Source: Ylistrum balloti
Taxonomy: Eukaryota
Direction of reading: 5' to 3'
Length of the DNA stretch: 64,000 nucleotides
NCBI RefSeq assembly: GCF_031769215.1
Contig: NW_026782003.1
Span: forward strand, 310,001 to 374,000
The notes under the pieces are model-generated. The model had not been told where the DNA came from. It did no database searches and saw only the letters and a list, made by a program, of their open reading frames with translations. Position numbers and translations under genes: made by a program. The stretch's first letter is position 1. Each line of letters starts with the position of its first letter. Below, piece after piece: positions 5,255-62,000 of the stretch.

Positions 5255-8200
5255 TTAAACGAATTGCAACTTTCGAGACTTTGCTGCCGCGAAGTCATCA
5301 ATGACAGTATCTATGTCAACCTGAGTGTCCCGATGGGTATGGAGGACAGCAAGAGCAGACAGCCGTTCTGTCGTCATTGTTGTCCGGAGGTAGGTCTTAA
5401 TTCGTCTCATCGAGCTGAAAGATCGTTCGGCTGATGCAGTCGATGTCGGCATTGAGAGAAGTACACTAAAGATATTTCTAATGTTTGGGTATAGATCTCG
5501 ACTTGTCCGATCCAGGATTTCGCAGAGACCTCTTGGTCGGTCCTTTAGTGGAATGGCTACCCATCTGGTTCTCCATCGCCGAACTTCCGTCAGGTAAGAC
5601 GCCTTGTCGGACAGGTCTACTTCAAAGGCATCAAACACTGCGTTGACAATATCGTCAGTGAGTTGCTGAAGATTACGTGGGAAGAGCGTCTCTGCTTTGA
5701 ATCTACCCTCGCTATCCAATAGCCGTGTCTCCAGCTCTGTGATCAAATGGTCAAGAAAAACCAAGAACAGACTAACTTTCCAATATTGCCTTGGGTCGGG
5801 TATCTGGTAGTTTGCACGTTGCTGCTGTCGTCCAGTTTGTCTCGGGACGCAAGGTTGAATACCGTATTCTGCGGCTACGCCGACAGCCTGGTCAAACAGC
5901 TCATTCCAAACATCATCATCCGCTCGTTCATTTCTGAGCATACTTATTACAGTCCTGCATTCAGTGGCGGCTTCCATAAGGTCGCAGTCTACTGACTGTA
6001 GATGGTTGGAAAGCGCAACAGTGCCGCTGAGGATGTGTTCAGTAACGACCAGCCCAATGATAAACTCGAACCTCAAAATTGCTGCCAATCTTCCACCCGC
6101 TTTGTCATCTCCGTCGTTCTTCAACGCCTCCAAACTACTAACGATGACACTGAATGAAGCCTTGAACGTGTGTAAGGCATCAGCACGACTAGACCATCTC
6201 GTTTCGCACAGTGTTCTCAGTTTGGTCCTAGACTCCATTTGATCTTTGGCGTTTTGGTCACCGAGGAGCTCATTTTTGAAGTACTGCAAGCGCTTTGCTG
6301 AATAATCGAAAGCAAAAGCGATATCCTGCACCGTTCCCATGATGGTCCGTACACAGGCTTGGGAAGAGGAATGAACAAGGGCAAGATTTAACTGGTGCGA
6401 CTTGCAATGCACATAGGTGGCATGCGGAGCTGTTTGTCTTATAATTGCCTGTACACCGCGAAATTTTCCAGACATGTTCGATGCCCCATCATACCCCTGA
6501 GCCCTTAATTTTGCAATGTCCAGGCCAAAGTTCCGAAGAGCTTGTATGATTTCAGGAGCCAAGTCCTCCCCCTTAATGCTCTTAACATGTATGAAACACA
6601 AAAAGTCTTCTTTAACACATATTTCACCGTTTTCTGTCGTATCAAGGTAACGCACACAGACAGACAATTACTCTTTGGTAGATTTGTCTGTACATTCGTC
6701 TGCAAGAACGGCGATGTACGGTGACTCCTTAATTCGAAGTGTAATTGCTTTGGTGACATGAGACGCCAGTATTTCAATTAATTCGTTCTGGATATCTGGA
6801 GATGTGTACTTTAACTGCGCGTTAGGGTTGGAGATGTGATCTTGGACCACAAGATCATCTGCACACAGAACATTCGAAATTGCCCAAAAATTGCTCTTTT
6901 CTTCAGTGTGCCCCCTGATTGCAATGTTTTGCCGACCACACAGCAGCAACACCTCGATTATCTTTTTCAATATGTGTCTGTTTTTGTTGACATCTGCTTT
7001 GTGAGAAGAGTCGAGTTTTGATACAATTGAGTCATCCTTTCCAGTCATAATATCAATAAAATGATCCGCCGAAATCTGACAGCCATGGTGAGGTGAGTTC
7101 TCTGCTTCATGACGCTTGACGTAAGTGGAAAGGTTGATCCAGTCATCTACTGGAGATCTGAATGGCCTCTCCTTTCCAGACTTATCTCCAAATATGAAGC
7201 AGTGCACGCAATAAACTGAATCCTTGGAGACGGAATAGCGCATCCATGGATGTTCTTTCAACCAGGTGTAGTTGAATATTCTCTCGCGGCCATGTACTTT
7301 TCTGAAATAGAAAGACACTGGTATGTAAGTACATGTAAACACAAAAGTACCGAGCATAAGTCAAAAGGGACATTCCGAATACGACATCATCAATATGAAA
7401 TCACATTCACTGAGAATTAGCTTATATTCTCATTAATACCTAGTATGTGATAAATAGAATCTTACACTAGTGACTATGTAGCATGCAATATGAAACTTAT
7501 CAAACTAGTTGATTAACTCGATATGCTCACAAATCTTTATGCAAGTGGCATGTAGAATTATTGAGCGATTTTCATGTACAAATACATGATGTAACAACGT
7601 AAAATCATCTATTTGAAAAACGCTTTTAAAATTGCATATATAGTACGGAAGTAGCATGTATTATATCATGAACCATATATGTTTCATCAGACGGGTTCTA
7701 TATACGTTAACTCACTTTTCTGCTGAATTTTAGTTTCAACTCGTACGTAAAGCCCTTTTCAAAATCCTTAAAGCCCTTTTCAAAATCCTTACAGCCCTTT
7801 TCAAAATCCATATAGTTTAGATATGTTTTTTCCTGAATTTAAAATCTAAATTCACCCTTTCTATTTATCTATTGAAATCATATTTTTAAAAAGCTACACA
7901 AAAAGAGCATTGATTTTTTTATCGATAAGCGTCCATAAGTATGAGGAAACTGTATTGTTACAATACATGTAGTTTAGACACATATTTTGTTGTACTTTAT
8001 GATCCTTAATGAATGCAAAAGCTCATAAAATCATCGTTACCTTTTATTATGCATAGGGTAGTGGAAAAAGAGCTAACAATACCCTTGAATAACAGAAACA
8101 ATATGTCTTAGGGTAATGGTAACGAAACTGTCAATGAACTGGGATTGCCGGTGACCAGACGGCTTAATCGCTTAAACTGACGGTCTAGTGTTCAGAAGAT

Positions 8201-8915
8201 CCTGAGTTCAATGCTGCATATTTTTGTTCTCTTAATTCCAAGAAGTATTCTTATATGACCCAAATTGTTAATAAGACGAAAAAGAAACAAGTTGGCATAT
8301 TTAACAAATGGCGAATGCTGTTAAATTGATTATTTGAAACAAAATGTAGAAAACAGCCGTATATTACATTTCAACCACAAACATACCGATATGAGGCACA
8401 GAACACTAATACAAACACGCATAAGATTATGTGTTTTTAGTGTAACGTGTGTATGCGCATTTTGCCTCCTATCTGTAATATCTCTAATATAGATGTTATA
8501 GTATAGACACTTGTAACACAATTCTATTAGTTGACGATTTATTTCTTTGTGATGATATTAGATATATCTAGGCCATTATTTACAGTAATTGTGAAATACT
8601 ATAGGAATGGGGAAAGACCGGGCTCGAACCCGGAACCTTCTGAACTCTAAAACTCTCATTTGCGAATAACCAATACCTTTGTGGAAAGGGAAAACCGAGC
8701 CACTGATCCCAGGACTCTAACAAAACTTTCTTCTTTATTTGATCTGTTAACTGTTCGCAAGCTAGGTCAACACAACATGGTCCTTCTTTTAGTTCTTGCT
8801 GAAGTTTGACTGGGTCTGATTTGTCATCGGGAAGCGATTCGGCTATATTTGACGAAGACTCTTCAACATCAGACTTTGGAACCTTTTTGAAAAAATCTTC
8901 TATCTTTTTCGACAT
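5255..8915 (-). pseudogene. hAT transposase (TTF-type Zn finger, DDE core, hATC dimerisation domain; ZMYM1/THAP12-like family), 2 exons, ~760 codons, one in-frame stop
   Basis: Exon 1 is 8915-8677 (MSKKIEDFFKK...FPFPQ, donor AG|GTATTG). Exon 2 is 7301-5255 (acceptor TTTCAG|); the phases join as PQ-R-KVHG. Motifs: WLKEHPWMRYS..VYCVHC, ADECTD, GYDGA, HCKSH, TRWSSR, SAERSFS. ORFs 6668-7357 and 5255-6667 are in the same frame, separated only by TAA at 6670-6668 (KE*LSVCVRY, where EQL is expected). Confidence 0.92.
7748..7809. repeat. 3 x 21-bp tandem repeat in the transposase intron
   Basis: TAAAGCCCTTTTCAAAATCCT three times, the third copy with two changes. Confidence 0.9.
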
Positions 8916-9321
8916 GATCTCGAAAATGTAAGCGCTTGTTAACTTGGTTACGGAAGTGTGTCTGGTATTATAAAAGTAAACTTGAAACCTGGAAAGTTTC
9001 CGGAATATATCGTCGCAACGGTATATAAAACAAATCGCGAGAAAAGAATCATGCACATTATGGAAATAGATTAATAAACAAGAAAAAGAAAACATGTTTT
9101 CTCGAATTTTATTCTTGCATGCTTGAGCATGCAAGCATGCACGGACGCTACGCCACTGGTAGTGAAATAACTTTCTAGCTAGATATCTACTCAATGTTAG
9201 TGTATTGAAATAGATTATCAAAGAACAGTTGTTACAAATGCATAAGCAGAACGATAACTCTGAGCGAACATACGTCATAGTCGGGATGGAGATAAGCGTT
9301 TGAGTGACACAGATGAGTTCC

Positions 9322-9342
9322 GGAACTGAAAGTGGAATTCCC
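9322..9342 (+). promoter_or_regulatory. Putative ETS-IRF composite element abutting a kappaB-like site
   Basis: GGAACTGAAAGT fits GGAAnnGAAA and is followed directly by GGAATTCCC (reverse complement GGGAATTCC). It lies ~1.2 kb upstream of the STAND-ankyrin start codon. Motif match only. Confidence 0.4.
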
Positions 9343-10556
9343 AATAGTTAGATTGCTGTACGGAAAGGTAGGCAGCTATTACAGATTTTATTACTTGATA
9401 ACAGAAACTTTATTATTTGCTTCGTGTAATGTCATGGGTTTAACAGACCTAAACCCAGACGATATGTATCTTTCACTAGCGTTAGTGTGTGGATCGGCGG
9501 AACATGCTTGTCCTAGCCCCTTCCTCATGTTCATCCCGGTCGAATGAAATCGTCTCTGAGTTGTACATGTACAGATACTTTTAGAGAGTGGACGAGGAGG
9601 AAAAGTATAAGATACAATTGAGGCTGAAATGTTAAGGTCGGTGGCCCCAGGTAGACTAGTTGCTTCACTTCTTATTCCGATTCGTGCACCATAGTTGTAA
9701 CAGGAAGTAAATTAAATTGTTGGAAAATGGCTTTAATCTTTTATTTGACCAACTTCTAGCATTGGACTTTTTTAAGAAATCTGCCTTATACTTTCAGTAT
9801 TGTCCTCAAGAGAAGTACCTTAGCAACAAGAAACTTAGAAATTATTGATGCTATTAACCGAATCAAGCTGACAACTACACTAACAAAAAATGTTGTTCCC
9901 AAGAAAATTTCTTCAAAATGTTAAGTAATGCAACTTTCAGCTTATAAGTACAGCTTTAAATTTTAAAAAAAAGTGCATTAACACACTAAAACTCAAGATA
10001 TTACATTGGAATTTATTTTACATTGAATCCCTACTTTCAATCAAACATCAGACAGGTACATGCTTTACATTAGTAAGGTAGGCATGTAACCATAGACAAC
10101 ACTTGAGGGGCAATACATCAAATGTACATGATGTGGAATTTTGTTTCGGCTGTACAACATAAAATGTTTTTTTTTTTTTGTTTTTCTTTCATGTTTTAAG
10201 CATAGAACATGGTTTCAAAAGAAAAACCATTCATGGATATCACATAACTCCACCCATAATTCTTTTACCTGAAGTCTTGTTAATACACTGTTTCATTATA
10301 TTTTCATGACTTGTCTTTAAACATGAAAACAGAAAAGTGTCTATACAACCAACACTTTTTTTATTACATGAACATGTTGTATTTATGATGGCATACATAT
10401 GGACAGTGAACTAATGAGTATCTCATATATTTTTATGTATAGTTTCAGATTCCATCAAGTCTGATCATTTTTATTATATATTAATATGTCCTTATTTTAC
10501 TCATTTTTTTCAGATGTCATGTTGAATACTTAGCTAGCCAACAAAGATTTGTAGAA

Positions 10557-13500
10557 ATGGCTTACCAACAGTCCACCCAACCAGGTAATCCACTACGTAT
10601 GTTACATAGGATGTATGCATCATGTTTTCTGGGATGTCTATGAATTATAACAAAACCTTTAGGATTGTGGCTGTGATTTTTCACACAACATTTTGTCTCT
10701 GTAATGATATAGTAACTAAACGGCAGTGGTTGTTCTGACTACATTGTATATTGAGCAAGTAGGTTTTGTGTGTATGTGTGTGTACTGTGTAGTTAACAGT
10801 GTACTAGATACACTTAATGTTTACATGTTTTACCTGCTTTCAACTTTGTTGATTCTCATGTATCATTTTTACAAAATTATAGAATCCCATTCCATACTTT
10901 CACTGTAAATATGAATATTTTCACTGTCTGGAACCAAGCCCAGTGAAATCATATATCCGCTTTTAAACCTTTGTATTGTGTACTTCTCAGGTAATCAGAG
11001 CCAATCTGAGTTTGTGGAAATTCACAAACCGCCTCCTGAATACAACCTAGAAGTGTTCCTCAACGAAGATGAACAGGAATGTAAGTCGATACGAGTAAAG
11101 AACTCAAACTTATACTTTCACTTGTATAAACATTTTTAATTTAACAAGTGAGTACATTGTTTTCACTGATTTGATTGTTAAATACTTATATCATTTCAAT
11201 AGGATTTTTGAGTATTAAACACTGGTTAATGATCAAAATAACCAAGTATCCAGTTAACTGGTTCAGCATAGTAAATTTTCGTTTGAAATAATATTATTTG
11301 AGAGGATGCCAAATAGTAATAATCAAAGGTTATTATCTAGAATAATACATTATTCAGTGCTTTAATGATGAGTGGATATCATCAAAATTCATTATTGTGA
11401 AGTAGAGTTGAACAAAGATGAATAACTTACATTGTTATTTTTGTGTTTCAGTGTGGCATAACTTTTTTTCGCCATATACTGTTGTTGGAGACATGATAGT
11501 CAAGACATCCTCATTTGAACATGCCATCCAGCTGTTATGGATGAACGGCTTTGTGACTATCACTGGCCAGCCAGGTGATGGAAAAACCACGATGGCAGAG
11601 TGGATCATCACACAGTTGGTCATTGCTCCAGAACTGTTGCCAGAAAAGGGAGACGACTCCTCCAAGGAATGGTTTGTCAAAAGGAGTCTAGCTGGTCGAG
11701 GAGAGAGGACATATGAGTTTGTAAAAGTGAATTCTCCTGCTGACTGGGAGAACAAGGTAGACACAAGCAAGGATCAAGTTGTGCTCATCGATGACATATT
11801 TGGTCCAGCAAATATAAACATGTATACTGCTAGAAGATGGAAAAACACCCTTGTAGACATATCAAAAAAAGTGATGGACAACGTGCCCAAGCTACTTGTT
11901 ATTATCTGTTTACATAAGAGCCACCAAGAAGCCTTGATAGGCGATTTGGATCATCTTGATCTGTTTAAAGAAGATGCGGTTGTAGATTTGACTCTTAGCA
12001 AATTCCAACCAAGCCAAGCCGAACGTGAGAGTATAATGGGGGCGAATGGAGGCTACCGAGGTCTGAGTTACAGAGAAAAGTACAATATTGACTTCAAGGC
12101 AGTTAAACAGTCCTATCCATATGTTGCGAGGATATTTGGCTCAGTGAAAAGTTTTGGTATGGAAGGGCCCAAGTTCTTCTCGAATCCTTTTTCATCCTTC
12201 AGAAATGCAATCCAGAAAATTTTTGGATTCAATAAAGTAATATACTTCACTTTGGCTGCAGGAGTCTTGTTTGATGGTAAGCTGGAACTAGACAAACACA
12301 GCTTCGAGGAATTCACAGAAAAAGAGCAACACATCATACGCCGATTAACAGAAGAAGTAGGCATAGAGGATTTGAATATGGCAAAAATGCGTTATGCAGC
12401 ATCATTGTTGTATGGATTGTTCCTTCTTCCAACAAAGAGACATTGCTGGAAATTTATGCATGAGAGGTCATTCCACACTATGGCTGATGCCTTGACCAAC
12501 AAGTACCCAGAGATAGTATTAGAGTTCTGCAGCAGTGATTTCCTCATCAACCGGATTAGGACCATTTCATGTTATTCTTCAAATGTCTCGTCCAGCATTT
12601 CACTTTGGCACAAAGAGTATCCTCAATTATGTCAGCGAATTACCTTTGAAATCCTGGCAGGAAATCTGCCCCAGCTGGCTGGCCACCCTTCATTTGATGA
12701 TGAGAAATTTGTTAAAAAATGGTTTGAGTTTATGACAGATATGGGAAGCTTACTACCTGTAGTTCAACAAAGAGGAGAGTACAACCGCTCACTTTTCTTT
12801 TGGTCCTGTTTCTATGGACAACACAACATGGTGGTGACATACCTGAAACATGAGGACCTGGAGGACATGCGCCAAGAGGAGTGGTTTAAGGAGGAGATGC
12901 GTGCAGGTGTCTTTGCCACTTGCTGTGGTCAATATGGTATGCGTGAGGCACATGCCAAGGTATTGGAAGCACTTCATAATGCTGGGATGGAACTTACTGC
13001 AGATGATCCTCTTCCAGAGAATGATCTGAATGATTTGTATGGATCAGATGTGACTTTCCTCTTGAAGATCAAGGCCCCACTCTTGCATATTGCAGCATTA
13101 AGAAGTGAGGAAGCTGTCATAGATTTCTTGGTAGATGTGGGCAAGCTGGATGTCAATGAAAAGTCAGCAGATGGTTACACTCCTTGCCACAGAGCTGTAT
13201 GTAACAAGAAAGAGGGCGCTCTCAAATCACTTCTTAAACATGAGGCTGACAGCAATGTCGCAGCACCAAATGGGCGTCGACCTGTTCACCTTGCACTGAT
13301 GTGTGGTAATGGCAATGTCATTTATGCTTTGAAAATGAATAATGAAAAAGTGAAAGATGGAAAGATGCCAGATGGGACTTCAATGTTGACATCAGCAATC
13401 TTTACACAGGACGACTATCTTATTCGAAACGTTGCAGACATCTACAGCAAGGAGAAACCTTACAGACCCTCAGGTGACCTCATAGCTCCGTTGCAGGCAG

Positions 13501-13949
13501 CAGCAGCCATGGGAGACGAGGAGAACATAAAACGCCTGTTAGACAGGAACTTTGATATTGACTGTCGTGATGACATGGGATGGACTGCACTTCATTATGC
13601 TGTTTACTTTCACAACGAGAAAATGATCCGTTTCCTACTTGAAAAGAATGCAAACATTGACTGCCAAAATCGAGACAATAAAACTCCTCTTCACATAGCA
13701 GCCGAGCAAGGTTACTATGTAATTTGTGAATTGCTGCTGGATAATGGTGCCAATGCCGACAAGCATACCATTAAAAATGAATTTTCTTTCTCTTCTGCTG
13801 CTAAATATGGACATGTAGCCTTGGCCAGATATCTAGTTAGGCAAGGATTGATTCTTAGTACTCCTAACGGAGGGAAGGCAGGTGACCTCGAGGACCCACG
13901 AATGTATGAAGAATTTGAGAGATTAAGTAGAGAATGGCGATTCAAATAA
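10557..13949 (+). CDS. STAND-class P-loop NTPase (nSTAND3-like) with C-terminal ankyrin repeats, ~871 aa
   Basis: Exons 10557-10584, 10991-11080 and 11452-13949 have GT-AG boundaries in consistent phase 1/1 (MAYQQSTQPGNQSQ...EQELWHNFF). Walker A ITGQPGDGKTT and Walker B VVLIDDIFG are followed by a helical region. Ankyrin repeats include TPCHRAV, PVHLAL, GWTALHYAV and KTPLHIAAEQG. Further 5' non-coding exons (e.g. ~9798-9920) are possible but not established. Confidence 0.88.
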
Positions 13950-20278: not shown

Positions 20279-23200
20279 TCAACTGTTACGTGAAACATTG
20301 TCTATACACCAGTCAAATGCATTTATGAACATTTTATACCAAGGTGTCAAATCCATGTCGGTTCTCATTTCAGTTGGCATCCACGGACACTGCCATGGTA
20401 GAAAGCAACGTTCAGGATGGGGCATGATGGCCAAATGGCGCCCATCCTCTGAACACAGAGCCCCTACACCATCCTCAGTACCGTTCGGGTTCATTGGGTA
20501 CACTGTAGTTGGCTCTCCGGAATCATCAACATAGCGAACTGGGATCAGCTGCTTGCTCACAAGATCTTCATAGATTCTACGATCTTTGAATACCATTCGT
20601 CCTACAATAAGAGTTACATATCAACATCATTCCTTCCACAAAATTTTTTTTCATGAAATTTTGAAAAGAAAAGAAAAAAAAATTGAACAATACTTTTGAT
20701 AGAGTTACCTTCTCCATGAGCACTCCACATGCCAAATGTAGTGCCCTCCATACCCTTAGTCATGATGGATGGACTGTCGTAGACCTTAACTGTGGAGAAC
20801 CGACACTCAAACCTATTGGACAAGTTGTGATCCAGCAACACCCCCTGTCCAACACCACTGTTGCTGTTTTCTGTATGCCAAAAACAGTGTTATTTTTAAT
20901 TCTTGAATAAAGATATCTCAATTATCTTTCTCCTTTTGATAGATACACCAAATAAAACTACAATGCACAACTAGCAGTTTATGTAAATAAGCAAGCAACC
21001 TAAATTTTTTGATAATTTTTGACGTCAAATGAGGCTTTAGTATTACAAATTCAATAGATATTCAGTCTAACTAATATGTAAGAAACTCATTTGCTATACC
21101 AATGAAAATATAGAACATTTTTATATCAAGTAATATCCAGTTATATCTTAATTTTCTTTACCTTTCTGGTCCTCGTCCGGGGCAACCCAGCCTAGCAGAG
21201 CCATTAGCTGGCAGCCATTACATACACCCAGACTGAAGGTGTCCTGTCTTTCTTTGAACTTAGCAAACTGTTTTTGTACAGACTTGTTGAACAAGGCTGT
21301 AGCTGCCCAGCCTATAACAGAAGTAGGAAATACATAAACATCAAGCTGTAGCTGTCCAGCCTATAATGCATGTAAGTTATAAGGTACTTAGACTTGTTTG
21401 CAATTGATAATGTATATTATTTCCATGATAACATCAATTTTATATTTATCAACAATAAAAAAACCTTTAGCAGATCCGCAAACATCAGCATAACTAAATC
21501 CCCCGACAAAAACAAGGCCCTGGAACTGGTCAAGGGTGATAGCCTCAGAACATAAATCCTGCATGTTGATGTCCCAAACTTCATGAAAGCCAGCCATTTT
21601 GAGAACAACTGCCATCTCACGGTCACTATTGCTGCCCTCCTCTCTCAGCACAGCCACTCTCAATGGGGTATTTACTACAAAGTACAACAAGACATAACGT
21701 CATTCTAACAACATGGCTGTTCATCATATATTACTTTGATGAAGACTATTCACGACTTTGTAAATTTACAATAATATTTTGCTACTAACAAACCCAAACT
21801 AATCAAAGTAGAATTAGTTTCAGATCTTCAAGTTGATCACTCTACATAAATTTATCAGATCAAATTAAAACAATTACAGCCACTTAAAATGTCAGAAATC
21901 TTACATGAAACTAATATCCAAGTTATATAACTGTAAATTGAAGAAAATTGAACGGAAAAATCTGTGGTGGTTTTGTCTTATGAATGGATATGTAGATTAC
22001 AAAATATCTTATTTAGCTCATCAAACTCCTCAAACTATTATAAGTTAAAAGAGTGAATCTGTGATTGTTATTTGTCAATAGGAATTTTAAGGAAAATTAA
22101 ATGTGGAAGACATGAAGGAGCAACACAATTCATTCAAAGCATGCAAATTAAAGATTTGTTACCTTGATTCATATGTTAGCATAACAGTGCAGTGTGATGC
22201 TAGGTTATACATACTTGTGTTGCTACCTTTTGGTGAGAATGACACTATATCACACTCAAATGGTACATGATACTGAGGACCTTCTCTCTCAGACAGCACT
22301 TTCTGTTCCTGGTCTACACACATGGTAGATGTTTGTCGACGCTCTAGCTGGAAACTTGTCTCCTCCCAGACATTACGCAGGAGAGGCATGTCATCCACCA
22401 ATACTGGGCTACCATTGATACTCAGGCGGACCTACAGAACAGGAATTATATAACGTAGTACATCTACACTGGCAACCATTTATACTCAGACAGACCTATA
22501 GAACAGAAATTATATAACGTAGTACATCTATACTGGGCTACCATTGATACTCAGACAGACCTATAGAACAAGAATTATATAAAGTAGTACATCTACACTG
22601 GCAACCTTTTAAACTCAAATATTTCTTTAAAAAAAAAGGAATAGATTAAAGTGGTACATCTATAACAAACAAGGCTTGTGGAAAAACACATCTTGTGATT
22701 CATCATTACCTGGTAAAGTCATTTCTGCCATTTCAGGGCAAAACAATAACGGTGTCAAAGACTAAGGGAGTGCAAAGCAGTTTAAAAGTGAGAAAAGATA
22801 TTGACCATAAGAGGATCCTATTCTGCTATTCGATGCTTTCCTCCTCCCGTCTACTCTCAACCAAAGAGGGGGAGGAGGCACATGTGAACAGAAAACCATC
22901 AAATAATGTATGTGTTATGAGTTTTCCCCCCGGTTAGTTACCACCAACTCCTCAGAGCAGAAAAACTTGCAGTGATAATATGACCATATACCTTAATTAG
23001 AACTCCCAGGTAATTTTATCATTGTTTTAAGACAACCCAAGTACACATCTTGACAAACACAATGAGCCAATGTCAAGAGAAATACTGACTTTCTTTGTGT
23101 TGGTATTTATTTAATGTTTTAGATTGTTGTCATTTTGTTTTTATTATCACTTTTTTGTGTTTTTGTTATTTTGGGGTTTTTTTATGATTCAATTAAATTT

Positions 23201-50289: not shown

Positions 50290-51207
50290 TAGGTACATTG
50301 CCCTGGTATAACAACACACTTTTACTGAGCTTTCCACTACAATGGAGTTTAATATTTACTCTAAACTGCCCAAGACGTGACGCATGATATGTGCCGTTGA
50401 TTGTTTGTCCTTTTTGCAGGTAATTTACTGTCAGAACATCATCAGCATCCCAGAAAACCGAGGCCATGACCTTTCCAGCTGATGGAATATTAATTGTCTT
50501 CTTTTGCGTGGTTGAACCAGGGTGTTTCCATTGTTGAGACTGTTGTTTTGCCTCTAGGGTGAAATGATGGACCCGAGTTTCGTCAAAAGTCACAAACCTC
50601 TGCAGACAGTTAGCATGATTTGCCTATAAAATGTTAAGATTAGCACGCGACAGAGTCCGTCTGGAATGTTTCCGATCAACTGTCAGAAATCTTGGTACAC
50701 AACGGGCTGAGAGCTTTCTTATTGCAAGATTTCGTAAGAATTGAATGTACTCTTTCCTGTGAAATCCCAATTGTAGTGGCTATACATCTCTCTGTAATTT
50801 GTCTGTTAGCCATAACAATATCATGGACATTATTGACTATTTGTGGGGTTGCAATAGGGACAGGTCTACCAGGACAGGCGTCATCCCCAAGGCTCTGCCT
50901 GCCACGCTTAAATTCTGTCATCCACTTTTTCACTGTAGAATGTGAAGGGACACCATTCCCTAATGTTGCTTCCATATCAGTATGGATATCCTTATGTGCT
51001 AGACCTTCCTTATGGCAATATTGCATCACTGCTCTTTCAGTGATTATGTCGATTTTTCAAAAGTAATTGGCTTTGTTTACTTCATTTGCATTGTTACACT
51101 AGTCTTCGGTTACACAGTATTAAATAGTCAGAGGATAAATAGAGCTGAAAAAACATCCCTGCTTAACTTCTTCAATTCAAGGCTCACAACTTGTCAAACA
51201 GTCCTTG
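50290..51207 (-). mobile_element. Degraded, 3'-truncated mariner transposon
   Basis: Frameshifted transposase pieces: ERAVMQYCHKEGL...STVKKWMTEFKRGRQSLGDDACPGRP (HTH) and TFDETRVHHF...SAGKVMASVFWD...TINGTYH (start of the DDD domain). A possible 5' TIR-like sequence lies at ~51180-51207; no matching 3' TIR was found. Confidence 0.85.
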
Positions 51208-53105: not shown

Positions 53106-54019
53106 ATGATGATTTGAGATCTTTGATAGAAATCACTATATTTCATGTACATCTTATATATACATGTTGGATTCAGTGGTATCCCACTGCAAATTGTAAC
53201 TCATGCCAGTGTCCAGTTTACGTACAAGAACATGGCCGATGTCGTGTAAAAGATTGGCTAAACTGGACAGTGACATGGCATTATCGCCGACCAAACACGC
53301 TGTTGTCGATCAGTTTCGGGTCAGATAGCCTAAATCATCCTGGCGAACAGCTCCGTTATTTGCTACAACCTCCGTGTAAAACGCATATTAATATCACTGT
53401 TACATCATAGACAATGCCCCGATTGTTAGGGCGATACTAGTGTACGATTCGGACTGGACTGGAGTGACAGTTATCCGGATAATTAATCGCTAGTGTCCGA
53501 AACTAGTCTGTACATTATACATGTAACGGTCAGTTAGTGACGTCTTACGTGGATTTATGGTACTTACAAATATATGAGACATAAAAGCGATAATTCTGCA
53601 TACAAGTCCGACAGTGTGATACGGAAGAGACATGTAAACAGACCATACGCTCAAAAAATACACAGCGTACCATTCGGGGCATAACTTTCACTCGGATTTA
53701 TCCTTCAACAGCTCAATATGTGTAAGTTGCAAGTTATTTAGTTAGTAACTGGTTTAATCATGTATTCTAGAACAGTTTAATTTGATTACTAACATGATGG
53801 AAGTGCACGTTTGAGAAGGAGAATGACGCCAGCCTGTTCCTTATATTGGCTTACAATGATTTCTTGTGTTACAATGTGAGCAGGAAAAACAGTCTAAGGG
53901 ACCTCGATGGAATACATCGTCCGTTGTTAATGTCGCACCCAAGTTGGAACACATTATTACTGACACTTATTGTTGTATACTCTGGGACCTCGTCCTTTAT
54001 TGCTACTTTTGTAGGTCCA

Positions 54020-55045
54020 GGGAACACATCACTCATTGTTATTCCTGTGCACCTGGGGAACACATCACTCATTGTTATTCCTGTGCACTTGGGGAACACA
54101 TCACTCATTGTTACTCCTGTACACCAGGGAAACATGCCACTCATTATTACTTCTATACACCAGGGAAACATGCCACTCATTGTTACTCCTGTACACTCAG
54201 AAAACATCCCACTCATTGTAACTTCTATACACCAGGGAAACATGCCACTCATTGTTACTCCTGTACACTCAGGAAACATGCCACTCACTGTTACTCCTGT
54301 ACACCAGGGAAACATGCCACTCATTGTTACTCCTGTACACTCAGGAAACACGCCACTCATTGTTACTCCTGTACACCAGGGAAACATGCCACTCACTGTT
54401 ACTCCTGTACACCAGGGAAACATGCCACTCATTGTTACTCCTGTACACTCAGGAAACATGCCACTCACTGTTACTCCTGTACACCAGGGAAACATGCCAC
54501 TCATTGTTACTCCTGTACACTCAGGAAACACGCCACTCATTGTTACTCTTGTACACCAGGGAAACATGCCACTCATTGTTACTCCTGTACACTCAGGAAA
54601 CATGCCACTCATTGTTACTCCTGTACACCAGGGAAACATGCCACTCATTGTTACTCCTGTACGCTCGGGGAACACATCACTCATTGTTACTCCTGTACAC
54701 CAGGGAAACACATCACTCATTGTTACTCCTGTACACTCAGGAAACATGCCACTCATTGTTACTCATGTACATCAGAGGAACACATCACTCATTGTTACTC
54801 CTGTACACAAGGGAAACATGCCACTCATTGTTACTTCTGTACACTCAAGAGAAAACGTCACTCACTGTCACTCCTGTACACTCAAGAGAACACGTCACTC
54901 ATTGTTACTCCTGTACACTCAGGAAACACATCACTCATTTTTACTCCTGTACATTTGGGGAACACGTCACACATTATTCCTGTACACTCAGGGAACCCAT
55001 CACTCATTGTTACTCCTGTACACTCTGAGAACACATCACTCAGTG
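54020..55045. repeat. 36-bp minisatellite, ~28 copies
   Basis: CATGCCACTCATTGTTACTCCTGTACAC(CAGG/TCAG)GAAA repeated; it explains the 12-residue periodic ORFs. Confidence 0.96.
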
Positions 55046-56445
55046 ACAATGCTGTCAGTTAATAAGCTAACATTGTCATATAACAAATCATACTTTATTT
55101 TACCTCAAAATAAATAAATGTCCTGAGTGGATCCAGCATCCATTTTCCCAACATTTTTCTATCTTTTTCTTTGTTACCAAGTAGTAATGGACTTTGCAGC
55201 AAATAACGTGTAAGATTTCTTATATCCCAGGTTATGACCATCAGTGACCTTCATGTTTTGTTTGTTTGTTTGGGTTTTTTGTGGTGGGGAGGGGATGGCG
55301 AGGGAGGTTTGGAAAATTAAAACAAAATATGATGTTCAAATGTGAATCGTAAGTACATTGTACCCAGACAAACATTTCCTTAAAAATGGGAAATCTGGGG
55401 GAAATGAAATTAATATCTTCCTAAGTTCTCTCTGAGTTGCAATGGTTTAATTTAATAGTTACTTGGTAAATAAAACATGTTGCCTTTTAAAATGATTTTA
55501 TTGTTAACTTGGCAAGTTGACTGTTTATTTTTAAGCCTTGATTTATTTACGTTCTTTAGCTTTTGTTACATATTATATGGCAATAGTGTTGAACCAATGA
55601 CGTACAACCAAATCTACATTAAACACTTGACGTGTTTTTTTTTTTTTTTTTTAAATTTTCATTCATATCAATGTTATTGAAAAATGTTGACAGGAAATGA
55701 CCAGTATATTTTTAACTGTGTAACAATGTCCGTGAACGTTTGATTTTCGTTACCTCCTACAACGGTGTTTGTTACAAGTCGGTTGTGTATGTGGGAGTTA
55801 CTCGTGCAGTGTGTATGTACTATTCGCCCAAAGCATACTGATCTTCGCCATGTGAAAGTTTAAAATTTCAAATTGTGTTTTTTTCAAGAACAAGTCCAAA
55901 TCAATAAGCTTTCATCGTAGGGTTTTCTCGGGAAGTTAATTTCAAATAACAGCACGTGTTTGTCAAGATTTCAATCCGATGATTTTAAGCATTACATTTT
56001 TCCTACATGGTGGTGTAAAGCTTGTTAAGTTGGGTGTTGTATAAAGCGCCTGTTTACTGGCTTCCACGGTCTACAGGTACCCGACTTAGTGTACTAGGTA
56101 AACATGTGTACAGGTTTATACAGGGACACCCAGACTACAAAGGACTTAGGTTGTTTACTTGTATGTAATGTCAATTATATGTTTATTTACAACATGAAAG
56201 ACCAGATTAACCAAAGAAACACCCAATGAAAGAATTTAATGTGGAAAGAGATCTGTTCGAAAACCGAGGAGTTCATTATCAGTATATCGAGAATATAAGT
56301 GCTGTTTTAGAGATGAATATGTAATGATGTGTGTGATCGATTTTTGTCAAAATCAATCCAATCTATTTTATTTTTTAATCATATTAAGTATAGAAAAAAC
56401 ATAATTACAAAGCATTATACAAGTGTTTCATACTTTGTCATAAAA

Positions 56446-59040: not shown

Positions 59041-62000
59041 ATGGCGAACACTGAATTCCTTTTAGAAGAGACCGAAATTTTCGAGGATCAAATTGTGCCC
59101 GACCAAGACGATTGTTTTCTCCCGCCTAGCGCGGATGTAGCTGTGCAGTGGAACGTAAGTACATTTTAGTTGAATAAATTTAACTGATTTCATCAAACAT
59201 CGCGAATACGTTTCTACCATGGGTTTGTTATCGGCTTGAGGTTGTCGAACTGAGAGATGGTAGTTCACACGCTTGGTTAACCTACACTAAACCTATATGT
59301 ACCGAGGGGGGAAAAAATCGATTTTTAATCAATTGAGATCTACTATCGGGCCTATATATTACCAAGTGGTACTTTTCCATTCAAGTAACAAGCCTGTATA
59401 CGTGTCATGACTTTAAATTAGAATATTTAATCATTTATCGAACCGAGGTAAGCCAGATGTCTTAACGCCATTTTGAGATGTCGACACTTGAAAAAGTCGG
59501 TCAGGTTGTCATGTAGGGCCTGGCGATATTTGATATTGTGAAATATTTGTAGACTGGCTAGGTCGCTCGTAACGTGTGCGTGTGTGTGACTGGGCACTTT
59601 GTAGAGTTTACCTGTGTCCTAGTATAAGTGACACTGTGATATCTACAGGTAAACGTCAGCCTTAACTTATAGCCGGATATACCTCAATAGTAAACCGAGT
59701 TTAATAAAACGTCCCATTTAAGTTAAGTATTTTAGAGAAACTACAATAATTTACTACACAACATACAATGTATCATCATAACATGCTTTGGGTTTAATAC
59801 TCTATATTCATCGAAGTGACGTCATTACGAAGGTGTTGGAATTCATTAACAGATACCCAAAAATACATTGTGTGGCCCTGCTAGCGACATACTCCCTACT
59901 ACGTCCGTTATAGTACCTATGTCATATTCTAAACAGTGATGCATCTTATAGGAAAACCCTGTAACGTAATCTACATTCGATTTTTTGAATGTTAGACACA
60001 ATATTCGGTGGTTAAAGTCTGGTGTGTGTCGTTCACCGCCATCGGCAGGTATTTAGCCAGGCATGTCTGAAACGGCGCATGTGATTGGACGGTTTATCAG
60101 TGATCGTGGACCTGATGAACCGACTGCGCCATTCCATTCATAACTAGTTTACAGAGCTGGAGTCATTCATAAAACTCAGTCAGCATACGAGTGGGCGTTT
60201 CGGCTCGTGAGCCGAAACCTTTGAAAGGCATTGATCGCGTGTTCAGCCATTTTGTTTCTGTTTGTGAAAAAGAATGTCTATATTTAATGTGAGCTTACAA
60301 ATAAAACTTATAAATAAAATATATTTGAAATGAAGAAGTGTGTACGAAAATTGATCAGCTATTTTATTAATTCATTTTTTTTAACTTTCAGGTTGTCCAA
60401 GAATTGGAAAAATATCTGCCATATGACCCCCTGACTCAAGCACCAGTAGCGAAGAAGGTGAGGCGCGAAAGCGCCTCAGTAGTCGACGAGTTCTTCGGCG
60501 ATGATAAAGACACACCGGAATTGAACAACGCCAAACAGCGCGTTCAGTTGGCACGTGCCAAGTACATGGACTTGGGACACCTTAGAACAGGGTTGATTGG
60601 TAACCCGAAGTCCCAGACAAGTGATATACCGAGACGCGGAAGTTCTAATCTCATTTCCGAATTCTTTGGAGATGTTTCTAGTCCCAAGAAAGTTATTCCG
60701 TCAGTCAAGAAGGTGGATACTACCTCCTTTGACGTCAGTGCTACCATGATGGACACATTCGTCCCCAGCAGTTACACTGAGTTAGAGGAACAGAGTAAAA
60801 AAGTGTCGGATTCGCTATGGGAGGACCTCCGAAGTAGTTTTGATATTCTCGAACCTTCGGTTAACGATGAGAAGAGAGACGAGGTATACCAAACGAAAGG
60901 TGCCACTACGATACCTAAGATTAAATCGGAATTTGTGGACTTAACTAGTAAACCTTCTTGTCAGTTTGAAAATTCACAAAGGACAACGCCTAATGGCGTA
61001 ACTATTAAAGTAGAGCCGTCGGAGCCGAGCTGTCTGTTGACAGCTAGTGTTTCAGATAGTTTTAATTCTCGTCCCAAAACTCTTCCTATTCCAGTTTCCC
61101 AACAAGTGATTCTTTCCCAGCCCGGGTCATCAGTTGTGCAATATATTACCCAGCTTAGATCTGTGGGCGTTAACAAATCGCAGGTGACCACAAACAATCG
61201 GATGTACGTGAGCACCCCGCCCCACACCGTTCCCGTGTTACCCCCTACTCCTCCTAACTCCCAGCCAGGAAGTCCAGACCAGGACACGGTCCGTCGGACT
61301 CCCCCACCCCCTTACCCTGGACTTCACCGCCCATCTCCCTTATCATCCCCAGCCGGTGGTTTCAACATTAAACCAGTCATTCCCATCAGGACCCACACAC
61401 CGACACGCCAAAGCAAGCCCCAGTTGACACATCCAGGCTGTTCCACCATCAAATACAACCGAAAGAACAATCCCGAGTTGGAGAAACGGCGTATCCACTT
61501 CTGTGAATTTCCAGGTGATTATTTTACCCCTCTCCCCTCTATAAAGAGAAACTACTTATTTACAATAATTTTACGATTACTTGTGCCATTAATAACCTTC
61601 GTGACGTAAACGCTATACTTTTAAACCATGTTGTAAATTGATAGACCTTCTGACGTCATGATTGATGTCAAGAAAATATTTACTTGGTCTGGGTCTGGCG
61701 AACGTAGAAAGTAAGCGCTCAGTGTTAAATACTACAGTGAATCAAACATCTTACAGAAGTAGTACGTGTGTGTACATGTGCTGAATATAGTGTTGACGCA
61801 GAACAGCTGTCGAGCAGTGGTATTTCGAGATAAAATCTATACACGATAAACGAAAACATAGAATGTTAATACATTTTTAACAGGAAAATAACCAAAGCAG
61901 TAGACAGTTGTTTTCAAATTTCGCTCATTTATGCGCCGTTTGTTGAAAGAAAGCCTCCGGCTCGGCATCTGTAACCTATCGAGATATTAGAAGGCGTACA

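What the first reader, a model, noticed from the sequence alone, without database searches (positions are those of the whole stretch)
10557..13949. Animal NLR-like receptor built from an nSTAND3-type NTPase and ankyrin repeats, with no N-terminal effector domain
Seen: a short N-terminus (~55 aa), then VKT..F..A..LL...GFVTITGQPGDGKTT, VKVNSP.DW and VVLIDDIFG, a helical/winged-helix-like region, a linker and two blocks of ankyrin repeats. The NTPase-to-ankyrin part is one 2.5-kb exon. Established: STAND NTPases with C-terminal repeats are the architecture of NLR/Apaf-1-type immune sensors, and the DDxFG Walker B pattern resembles the nSTAND3 family known largely from prokaryotic conflict systems and seen in molluscan protein models (family assignment from memory, not searched). 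Inference: an uncharacterised intracellular pattern-recognition sensor that lacks death, TIR or HEPN effectors and so would need a partner; the intron-free core hints at retroposition or lateral origin.
Basis: partly seen in the sequence, partly recalled or inferred. Interest (0 to 1): 0.72.

Follow-up and report, generated by a model that had tools for sequence, protein, structure and literature searches.

The report
Ancient effector-less nSTAND3–ankyrin gene of molluscs
This is a real, intact scallop gene for a switch-type (STAND/NLR-like) ATPase joined to about ten ankyrin repeats. It is an old, single-copy, slowly evolving mollusc gene, already predicted in public databases but never studied, and not a recent import or a fast-evolving pathogen sensor.

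Summary
Window 10557-13949 (+) is a three-exon gene (10557-10584, 10991-11080, 11452-13949). It encodes 871 aa and is identical to NCBI's "uncharacterized protein LOC132545529" of the scallop Ylistrum balloti. Pfam assigns nSTAND3 (E 3e-24) plus ankyrin repeats, with no NACHT or NB-ARC hit. An AlphaFold model of the N-terminal 520 aa matches STAND proteins (MalT, NRC2, NLRP1/3, Avs5, Apaf-1) over the nucleotide-binding, helical and winged-helix parts. No effector domain was found in this gene or in any orthologue.

The gene is single-copy here, although the genome holds more than 100 other nSTAND3 loci. Orthologues occur in scallops, ark clams, oysters, pearl oysters, mussels and freshwater mussels, with abalone as sister group. 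The 2.5-kb terminal exon and its intron position are shared across these groups, and synteny with PFAS is kept in Pecten. That argues against recent retroposition or lateral transfer. dN/dS is about 0.15 in every domain, and the ankyrin binding-face positions are as conserved as the framework, so a conserved ligand is more likely than a variable pathogen ligand.

A short N-terminal motif (F-V-x-I-H) is conserved from scallop to abalone and may be the output element. No RNA data exist for this species. Another nSTAND3 gene of this genome was noted earlier by the scan.

The parts
10557..10584 (+). Coding exon 1 (Met1 to the first base of codon 10), followed by a GT donor at 10585
   Evidence: Sequence read. 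The joined translation equals NCBI model P0001.
10991..11080 (+). Coding exon 2 (aa 10-40). It encodes the conserved N-terminal motif S-E-F-V-E-I-H-K and the acidic stretch NEDEQE.
   Evidence: Splice sites. The exon is conserved in Pecten (L007 11200-11400). The motif [FY]-[VI]-x-[IL]-H is conserved from scallops to Unionida and Haliotis.
11452..13949 (+). Terminal coding exon (aa 40-871 plus the stop codon), holding the whole STAND module and the ankyrin stack
   Evidence: Open frame. The same single exon is found in Pecten and in Pecten, Mytilus, Potamilus and Haliotis.
11499..12038 (+). nSTAND3 P-loop nucleotide-binding domain (aa 56-235)
   Evidence: Pfam PF20720, E 2.9e-24, 86 bits against a cut-off of 27.2. 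The AlphaFold model shows an alpha/beta core with five strands.
11565..11588 (+). Walker A motif G78-Q-P-G-D-G-K84-T85
   Evidence: G81, G83 and K84 are invariant among the 15 Pteriomorphia-level orthologues. K is replaced in one distant orthologue, P0025.
11778..11795 (+). Walker B motif V-V-L-I-D153-D154
   Evidence: The pattern hhhh[DE]D holds in 14 of 15 orthologues. The second acidic residue is lost in oysters, Unionida, P0025 and P0026.
12039..12593 (+). Helical domain plus winged-helix domain (aa 236-420), including the invariant W372-x-F-x-H376-E377 ('MHD-like') motif at 12447-12464
   Evidence: Structural matches to MalT, NRC2, NLRP1/3, NOD2 and Apaf-1 run over model residues 9-384, which are aa 49-424. 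Invariant columns are listed.
12594..12785 (+). Helical hinge (aa 421-484), the best conserved segment of the protein (QRFTFEIL.GN ... EMGSLLPV)
   Evidence: Mean pairwise identity is 0.80 among scallops and 0.51 across the orthogroup, the highest of all regions. Omega is 0.14.
12786..13847 (+). Ankyrin-repeat stack of about 10-11 repeats (aa 485-838). The first two or three are degenerate.
   Evidence: Pfam Ank_2 E 1.2e-45, with Ank, Ank_3, Ank_4 and Ank_5 also hitting. The full-length AlphaFold model shows paired helices from 487 to 836 at pLDDT 83-93.
13848..13949 (+). Low-confidence C-terminal tail (aa 839-871) and the TAA/TGA-type stop at 13947-13949
   Evidence: pLDDT is below 50. Conservation is weak.

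Best explanation
SHOWN. Window 10557-13949 is an intact, single-copy gene of the scallop Ylistrum balloti. Its 871-aa product has a 55-aa N-terminal peptide without a known domain, then an nSTAND3-type STAND module (P-loop domain, helical domain, winged helix with an invariant H-E), a highly conserved helical hinge, and a stack of about ten ankyrin repeats. It belongs to an orthologous group at least as old as the split between pteriomorph bivalves and freshwater mussels, with abalone proteins as sister group. It has kept its exon structure and is under purifying selection in every domain, including the ankyrin binding face.

INFERRED, from how solved STAND proteins work (Apaf-1, NLRC4, MalT, Avs). 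The protein rests as a closed, ADP-bound monomer in which the winged-helix histidine and the repeat stack hold the nucleotide pocket shut. Binding of a ligand to the concave ankyrin face allows ADP/ATP exchange and oligomerisation.

INFERRED, about the ligand and the output. Because the ankyrin face is conserved, the ligand is probably an invariant molecule: a host protein, or a conserved danger or microbial pattern. A rapidly changing pathogen protein is less likely. Because no effector domain exists, the output is probably recruitment of a separate partner by induced proximity. The best candidate output element is the conserved N-terminal F-V-x-I-H peptide encoded by exon 2. In short, this looks like a conserved, 'institutionalised' branch of the otherwise expanding molluscan nSTAND3 family.
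For: Gene model and identity.

Family: Pfam nSTAND3 at 86 bits, with no NACHT or NB-ARC hit. The nearest ESM Atlas clusters are nSTAND3 clusters of molluscs, then of bacteria.

Fold: the STAND-module model has pLDDT 82.5 and pTM 0.80. Foldseek's best hits are NLRP7, EfAvs5, NLRP14, NOD2, SAMD9, Avs3, NLRC4 and Apaf-1. VIA-align gives MalT Z 13.8, NRC2 13.4, NLRP1 and NLRP3 12.4, all over about 270-330 residues including the winged helix. Generic AAA+ proteins align over only about 190 residues.

Catalytic motifs: conserved in scallops and most orthologues.

Single copy: the next best locus in the genome has 24% identity and 62 bits, while the nSTAND3 family has at least 108 candidate loci.

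Orthogroup and age. In the tree, the bivalve clade has SH-aLRT 99 and the Haliotis sister clade 99, and scallop paralogues fall outside.

Conserved exon structure. Synteny with Pecten, including PFAS downstream.

Selection: omega is 0.15 overall and 0.10-0.21 per domain for Ylistrum against Pecten. Ankyrin binding-face positions show 0.79 identity among scallops, against 0.78 for the framework and 0.56 for other exposed positions. Repeats are only 20% identical to each other.

N-terminal motif: conserved from scallop to abalone.

Expression in relatives: contig L008 is a spliced transcript with an in-frame stop upstream of the ATG. An independent genomic run of this species shows 9 substitutions and no indel in the coding sequence.
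Against: No expression data exist for this species; the only run found holds genomic DNA.

Nothing here tests nucleotide binding, oligomerisation, the ligand or a partner. The N-terminal peptide is modelled with pLDDT below 50 and docks nowhere with confidence.

In some orthologues the Walker motifs are degenerate: oysters have GK-R and D-K, Unionida have E-N, and P0025 lacks the P-loop lysine. A nucleotide switch may therefore not be essential to the family's function.

dS between the scallops compared is about 1 or saturated, so omega values are rough. The pairwise, domain-level test cannot exclude a few positively selected sites. The binding-face comparison rests on 40 positions in five species.
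Confidence: 0.6

Rival explanations
1. One reading: a classical intracellular pattern-recognition receptor. Its ankyrin repeats would bind variable pathogen molecules and it would be induced by infection, like the lineage-expanded NLRs of marine invertebrates.
For: It has the STAND-plus-repeat architecture. It belongs to a family that is heavily expanded in this genome. Bacterial members of the family, such as Avs5, are proven antiviral sensors. Some paralogues carry HEPN_DZIP3 RNase or SAM domains typical of immune proteins.
Against: The gene is single-copy with 1:1 orthologues across bivalves. Omega is 0.10-0.21 on the ankyrin blocks. Binding-face positions are as conserved as the framework. 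There is no high internal repeat conservation. No ISRE or kappa-B consensus lies in the 1.2 kb before the ATG, which is weak evidence because the transcription start is unknown.
Confidence: 0.15
2. A helper or regulator that hetero-oligomerises with the effector-bearing nSTAND3 paralogues. It would act either as a shared downstream hub or as an effector-less brake, as in sensor/helper NLR pairs or NAIP/NLRC4.
For: It lacks an effector while relatives in the same family have HEPN_DZIP3 or SAM. It is the one conserved, single-copy member among more than 100 variable loci, the pattern expected of a hub. The hinge and winged-helix regions are the most conserved.
Against: Its STAND module is only 20-24% identical to the paralogues of the same genome, which makes mixed oligomers less likely. 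No co-occurrence or interaction evidence was obtained. The conserved ankyrin face argues that it binds something itself.
Confidence: 0.12
3. A non-immune scaffold or housekeeping regulator, comparable to the NLRP proteins of the oocyte cytoplasmic lattice or to ankyrin adaptors. In this reading the NTPase fold is mostly structural.
For: Purifying selection, single copy and deep conservation. Walker A or Walker B residues are lost in oysters, Unionida and P0025, while the rest of the protein stays conserved. Transcript contigs were recovered from many public runs of oysters and mussels.
Against: The scallop, ark-clam and mussel proteins keep canonical Walker A and B motifs and the winged-helix H-E, which points to a working nucleotide switch there. 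No tissue or developmental expression data were available.
Confidence: 0.12
4. A recent retrogene or a gene laterally acquired from bacteria, as hinted by the intron-free core.
For: The STAND-ankyrin core is one 2.5-kb exon. nSTAND3 is also a bacterial family.
Against: Two spliceosomal introns lie within the coding region. The same exon boundary is found in Pecten, Mytilus, Potamilus and Haliotis. Synteny with PFAS is kept in Pecten. The gene tree broadly groups by taxon. All 14 named clusters among the 20 looked up from the top 150 relatives are molluscan. Long single exons are the rule for the paralogues too. An ancient bacterial origin of the whole animal nSTAND3 family remains possible but was not tested.
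Confidence: 0.02

Closest known systems
Pfam PF20720 nSTAND3 family, including bacterial Avs5 (SIR2-nSTAND3-TPR/Sel1 antiphage sensors; PDB 9jap, 9nc9)
   Same: The P-loop domain scores over the family's cut-off. Avs5 structures are among the best structural matches. Both share the layout of a STAND module followed by helical repeats.
   Different: Avs5 carries an N-terminal SIR2 effector and TPR/Sel1/PPR repeats. This protein has no effector and uses ankyrin repeats. It is eukaryotic, spliced, and vertically inherited in molluscs.
Lineage-expanded molluscan nSTAND3-ankyrin genes, some with HEPN_DZIP3 or SAM. The DZIP3-type HEPN + ATPase + ankyrin expansions in oyster were noted by Anantharaman et al. 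2013 (PMC3710099).
   Same: They share the same NTPase family, the ankyrin C-terminus and the single large exon.
   Different: Those genes are many, variable and often carry effectors. This one is single-copy and only 20-24% identical to them in the STAND module. It has no effector and has 1:1 orthologues across bivalves.
Animal NLRs (NACHT-LRR: NOD2, NLRC4, NLRP family) and Apaf-1 (NB-ARC-WD40)
   Same: They share the three-part STAND fold with a winged-helix histidine near the nucleotide, and a repeat sensor at the C-terminus.
   Different: There is no NACHT or NB-ARC HMM match. The repeats are ankyrin, not LRR or WD40. There is no CARD, PYD or BIR effector. Like Apaf-1 and unlike most invertebrate NLRs, it is conserved and single-copy.
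Fungal NLRs with ankyrin, TPR or WD40 repeats, some of which have only a short N-terminal amyloid signalling motif instead of an effector domain (background in PMC13449251 and from my own knowledge of the Dyrka/Daskalov work)
   Same: They share a STAND module plus ankyrin repeats. In some members a short conserved N-terminal peptide stands in place of an effector domain.
   Different: Fungal ankyrin sensors often show high internal repeat conservation and diversification, whereas here repeats are 20% identical to each other. The F-V-x-I-H peptide has no demonstrated amyloid or templating property, and no partner carrying the same motif was sought.

Membership tests
nSTAND3 (Pfam PF20720) | Match to the family HMM above the curated gathering score | tested here: met
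   86.0 bits against a cut-off of 27.2, E 2.9e-24, covering profile positions 2-149 of 155. The orthologues carry the same precomputed call.
nSTAND3 (Pfam PF20720) | Closest relatives by profile search and by language-model features are nSTAND3 proteins | tested here: met
   The profile search gave 1119 hits. All nine top hits that were scanned carry PF20720. The Atlas neighbours are nSTAND3 clusters.
STAND NTPases (superfamily) | Intact Walker A (GxxGxGK[ST]) and Walker B (hhhhD[DE]) | tested here: met
   GQPGDGKTT and VVLIDD in this protein. The motifs are conserved in 14 of 15 close orthologues and degenerate in some distant ones.
STAND NTPases (superfamily) | P-loop domain followed by a helical domain and a winged helix that carries a conserved histidine | tested here: met
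   Structural alignments to MalT, NRC2, NLRP1/3, NOD2 and Apaf-1 span aa 49-424, with Z 10.6-13.8. W372, H376 and E377 are invariant among 15 orthologues.
STAND NTPases (superfamily) | Nucleotide-dependent oligomerisation | not testable with these tools
   This needs purified protein (SEC-MALS or cryo-EM with ADP and with an ATP analogue).
NLR in the strict sense (NACHT + LRR) | NACHT domain (PF05729) | tested here: not met
   No NACHT hit even at E up to 1. Only NPHP3_N appears, at E 0.14.
NLR in the strict sense (NACHT + LRR) | Leucine-rich repeat sensor | tested here: not met
   Only ankyrin families match the C-terminal half.
Apaf-1 / NB-ARC family | NB-ARC domain (PF00931) and a WD40 or LRR sensor | tested here: not met
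   There is no NB-ARC hit. The similarity is at fold level only.
Innate immune pattern-recognition receptor (functional class) | Induction by, or requirement for defence against, pathogens; signs of diversifying selection on the sensor | tested here: inconclusive
   No RNA run exists for this species. The selection tests show purifying selection, not diversification. Function was not tested.

The most novel reading that the evidence does not exclude
The effector-less protein would signal through its conserved N-terminal F-V-x-I-H peptide, conserved from scallops to abalone and encoded by its own small exon. On oligomerisation the peptide would be clustered and would recruit or template a separate executioner protein. 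That is analogous to the short N-terminal signalling motifs of fungal and bacterial NLRs. It would make this gene a fixed 'hub' of the molluscan nSTAND3 network and a new animal STAND signalling mode.
Probability: 0.08. Interest if true: 0.7.

Novelty: new member of a known kind. Interest (0 to 1): 0.33.

Why it matters
Bivalves have very large, fast-changing repertoires of STAND/NLR-like genes, and almost none has a known function. This gene is the opposite case within the same family. It is one copy, kept for hundreds of millions of years, with a conserved binding face and no effector. That makes it a tractable entry point, because one orthologue per species gives a clear knock-down target in oyster, mussel or scallop. 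It could show how nSTAND3 proteins signal in animals and whether a conserved member serves the expanded ones. On present evidence, however, it is an already predicted, uncharacterised member of a known family, not a new kind of system.

Tried and rejected
- RNA evidence in this species. The run search found one holder (X1). When laid on the window, it proved to be genomic DNA: a 5.3-kb contig runs through both introns. So nothing can be said about expression or the transcription start.
- Sequence search of the STAND module against PDB chains gave only noise, with E at least 0.12.
- NCBIfam and PADLOC gave only ankyrin-driven or weak hits and no defence-system assignment.
- Looking up the contig of the Mizuhopecten protein P0002 returned nothing on record.
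- Literature. 'nSTAND3' occurs in five papers, none on molluscs. The 2020 eLife paper does not use the term. The locus names of the orthologues occur in no paper.
- Promoter motifs. There is no ISRE or kappa-B consensus in the 1.2 kb upstream of the ATG. This is weak evidence.
- PPxY reading of 'PPPEY' in the N-terminus: rejected, because it is not conserved outside two scallops.
- Pseudogene: rejected, given the intact frame, omega 0.15, and frame-preserving polymorphisms.
- Link to the upstream hAT transposon: rejected. It lies on the other strand, in high-copy DNA, and is absent from the Pecten locus alignment.
- One Pfam call failed on a size limit and was repeated with fewer proteins.
- No complex prediction was run, because the report does not claim a specific binding pair.
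- Handling of the spliced model. Searches used the large exon by reference, or the database protein P0001, which equals the spliced model. No typed or joined exon sequence was sent to any search tool. The exons were joined only inside a local script, to check the reading frame.
Full report
OBSERVATION. The window holds an 843-codon open frame at 11418-13949 on the + strand. Reading the DNA upstream shows an ATG at 10557 and a donor after 10584 (CCAG|GTAAT). An acceptor lies before 10991, a donor after 11080 (GAAT|GTAAGT), and an acceptor before 11452 (TTTCAG|TG). The three exons (28 + 90 + 2498 bases) encode 871 residues. A word-based search with the large exon returned a 100% identical 871-aa protein, P0001. 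This is NCBI's 'uncharacterized protein LOC132545529' of the scallop Ylistrum balloti, and its N-terminus is exactly the one derived from the splice sites. The finding's coordinates are therefore start codon to stop codon. The window contains no N.

An independent public run of the species holds the locus as genomic DNA. It shows nine substitutions and no indel in the coding region: four synonymous codons and four conservative replacements, I252L, F305L, Y494F and H636R.

Handling of the spliced model: searches used the large exon by reference or the database protein P0001. The exons were joined only in a local script to check the frame.

WHAT THE PROTEIN IS. Pfam places aa 56-235 in nSTAND3 (PF20720; 86 bits against a cut-off of 27.2). 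The C-terminal half falls in the ankyrin families (Ank_2 E 1e-45). NACHT and NB-ARC do not hit even at E up to 1.

An AlphaFold model of aa 41-560, built on 15 orthologues, is confident (pLDDT 82.5, pTM 0.80). Foldseek's best matches in the PDB are STAND proteins: NLRP7, EfAvs5 (a SIR2-STAND protein of the nSTAND3 type), NLRP14, NLRP2, NOD2, SAMD9, Avs3, NLRC4 and Apaf-1. The independent VIA-align search gives MalT (Z 13.8), NRC2 (13.4), NLRP1 and NLRP3 (12.4), an archaeal STAND-TPR protein (12.1), NOD2, Avs5 and Apaf-1. These align over 270-330 residues that include the helical and winged-helix domains. Generic AAA+ proteins align over only about 190 residues.

Several motifs are conserved. 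Walker A is G-Q-P-G-D-G-K-T and Walker B is V-V-L-I-D-D. A winged-helix motif W372-x-F-x-H376-E377 occupies the place of the 'MHD' histidine of NB-ARC proteins and is invariant among 15 orthologues.

The full-length model (pLDDT 74.6) shows a helical hinge (aa 421-484) leading into one continuous stack of about ten to eleven ankyrin repeats (aa 485-838, pLDDT 83-93). The first 56 residues, a loop at 222-282 and the last 33 residues are not confidently modelled.

NO EFFECTOR DOMAIN. Several results agree:
- The 55-aa N-terminus has no Pfam match.
- The longer, low-complexity N-termini of the oyster and mussel orthologues have no Pfam match either.
- No orthologue carries any domain other than nSTAND3 and ankyrin.
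- The + strand upstream of the ATG holds no coding-like ORF.
- In a related scallop, a 2.9-kb contig (L008) carries the spliced coding sequence with an in-frame stop 36 bases before its ATG. That N-terminus is therefore complete. Because the contig lacks the introns, it is also evidence of transcription.

EVOLUTIONARY CONTEXT. The genome holds many nSTAND3 loci. A six-frame scan found 108 candidates; the 21 that were scored all exceed 97 bits and lie in long open frames. Yet this gene is single-copy: the next best match to its STAND module has 24% identity.

A word-based search with the STAND module alone returned only nSTAND3-ankyrin proteins of scallops, oysters, ark clams, mussels and pearl oysters, followed by a gap from 345 to 69 bits. 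An exhaustive profile search gave 1119 hits. Nine representatives match full-length at 378-845 bits. Among them are freshwater mussels (Potamilus, Sinanodonta), and next at 290 bits is an abalone protein.

In a maximum-likelihood tree of 73 STAND modules, the bivalve sequences form one clade (SH-aLRT 99). Within it, scallops, ark clams, oysters plus pearl oysters, and mussels each form a supported subclade, with the freshwater mussels outside them. Haliotis plus one further sequence is the sister group (99). The nearest scallop paralogues (Mizuhopecten 'Ankyrin-3', Argopecten) fall elsewhere. All 14 named clusters among the 20 looked up from the top 150 hits are molluscan.

The closest paralogues also combine nSTAND3 with ankyrin repeats. 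Some add a DZIP3-type HEPN domain or a SAM domain N-terminally. That architecture was noted for oyster expansions by Anantharaman et al. 2013 (PMC3710099).

GENE STRUCTURE AND SYNTENY. In Pecten maximus, Mytilus galloprovincialis, Potamilus streckersoni and Haliotis asinina, the STAND-ankyrin core is likewise one terminal exon of about 2.5 kb. In each it begins at the same point, just before the conserved L-W-x-x-F, and is preceded by small 5' exons. The Pecten locus is colinear with the window, covering exon 2, the large exon, and the exons of the downstream minus-strand gene. That gene is PFAS, to judge from its GATase_5 exons and the 1350-aa neighbour in Pecten. The 'intron-free core' is therefore an ancestral trait of an old, vertically inherited gene. 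It gives no hint of recent retroposition or lateral transfer. Whether the whole animal nSTAND3 family once came from bacteria, which are the nearest non-mollusc Atlas clusters, was not tested.

SELECTION. Nei-Gojobori estimates on the large exon give omega 0.15 for Ylistrum against Pecten (dS about 1.0). Per region the values are 0.19 (NTPase), 0.11 (helical and winged helix), 0.14 (hinge), and 0.21 and 0.105 (the two ankyrin halves). More distant pairs are saturated.

Eight canonical repeats were placed in register. The positions that form the target-binding face of ankyrin repeats (2, 3, 5, 13, 14 in the consensus numbering, from my own knowledge of designed ankyrin proteins) are 79% identical among five scallops. 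That equals the framework positions (78%) and exceeds the other exposed positions (56%). The repeats are only 20% identical to each other, with a maximum of 32%. This is unlike the highly self-similar repeats of diversifying NLRs described in PMC13449251. The best conserved segment of the whole protein is the hinge between winged helix and repeats. This is the signature of a protein that binds something invariant, not of an arms-race receptor.

A CONSERVED N-TERMINAL PEPTIDE. Aligning the residues before the P-loop shows a short motif, [FY]-[VI]-x-[IL]-H. It reads EFVEIHK in Ylistrum, EFVPLHR in Saccostrea, EYIEIHK in Mytilus, VYVDIHE in Unionida and AFVDIHQ in Haliotis. About 20 residues later comes [FY]-L ... 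W-x-x-[FI]-F. In the window the motif is encoded by exon 2. It is the only conserved feature outside the folded domains, and thus the best candidate for an interaction or output element. Its role is inference only.

MECHANISM. The following are shown: a STAND fold with intact nucleotide motifs, a repeat stack, no effector, and deep conservation.

The following are inferred from solved STAND proteins. The protein has a closed ADP-bound resting state. A ligand binds on the ankyrin face. Nucleotide exchange and oligomerisation follow, and a separate partner is recruited, perhaps through the N-terminal peptide.

One caveat applies. Some orthologues have lost key catalytic residues: oysters have G-K-R and D-K, Unionida have E-N, and one unnamed lineage has lost the P-loop lysine. 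Hydrolysis, or even nucleotide binding, may therefore be dispensable in parts of the family, which keeps a scaffold-type function in play.

Rivals considered were a classical inducible pathogen sensor, a helper or brake for the effector-bearing paralogues, a non-immune scaffold, and a recent retrogene or lateral transfer. The last is contradicted.

COMPARISON AND NOVELTY. The protein is a member of nSTAND3 by every test available here. It is NLR-like in fold and layout, but it is not a NACHT-LRR or NB-ARC protein. It is already predicted in NCBI, and its orthologues are auto-named 'Novel STAND NTPase 3 domain-containing protein' in UniProt. No paper mentions it.
- the delimitation of an old, single-copy, effector-less orthogroup inside an expanding family;
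- its conserved exon structure;
- the conserved ankyrin face;
- the N-terminal motif.

It is a paralogue and was not re-examined here.

VERDICT. This is a new, uncharacterised member of a known kind and is of moderate interest.

Noticed in passing
window 5255-7357 (- strand), and 8580-9344 (- strand): Two adjoining ORFs (470 and 229 aa, separated by one stop at 6668-6670) encode a hAT-type transposase (DUF4371 plus the hAT C-terminal dimerisation domain). The DNA at 8700-9158 has about ten times the depth of its surroundings in a genomic run, so it is repetitive. It looks like a transposon copy lying head-to-head with the nSTAND3 gene.
   Followed up: partly
window 20282-21693 (- strand): These are exons of the C-terminal glutamine-amidotransferase (GATase_5) part of PFAS (FGAM synthase). 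They are 75-90% identical at protein level to the Pecten maximus neighbour, so the pair nSTAND3-ankyrin / PFAS (tail to tail) is syntenic between the two scallops.
   Followed up: partly
window 50204-51029 (- strand): A mariner/Mos1-type transposase remnant, split into an HTH_48 ORF and a partial DDE ORF.
   Followed up: partly
window 44592-45014 and 53846-55117: Minisatellite arrays that stay open in several frames on both strands (units of about 30 bases, for example ...TPVHQGNMPLIV...). The long ORFs there are repeat artefacts, not genes.
   Followed up: no
window 60404-61609 (+ strand): A 401-aa Ser/Pro-rich ORF without a Pfam match. It ends in ...[10 protein letters not shown], which from memory resembles the start of the first C2H2 finger of a Krueppel-like factor. 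It may be the large exon of a KLF-type gene whose fingers lie downstream.
   Followed up: no
orthologues P0006/P0022 (oysters), P0024/P0176 (Unionida), P0025, P0026: Catalytic motifs decay outside scallops, ark clams and mussels. Oysters have Walker A G-K-R and Walker B D-K. Unionida have E-N. P0025 has lost the P-loop lysine (G-N-G-T-S). P0026 has lost the winged-helix histidine. The rest of the protein stays conserved in these sequences.
   Followed up: partly
L009 (Logan contig of run SRR27895283), 88-2706: The open frame of this orthologue contig reads through the sequence upstream of the acceptor of the large exon (…FIFCVSVWHNFF, like the window's …CYFCVSVWHNFF). The contig is therefore unspliced or genomic, and the 870-aa protein P0005 has an artificial N-terminus.
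   Followed up: partly
G000 contigs C478, C15, C1325, C551, C359, C578 and others; L002-L006: There are at least 108 candidate nSTAND3 loci in this scallop genome. Those scored lie in open frames of 233-1287 codons. The five closest to this gene all combine nSTAND3 with ankyrin repeats. L005 and L006 are near-identical neighbours on contig C576, about 22 kb apart, which suggests a recent tandem duplication.
   Followed up: partly
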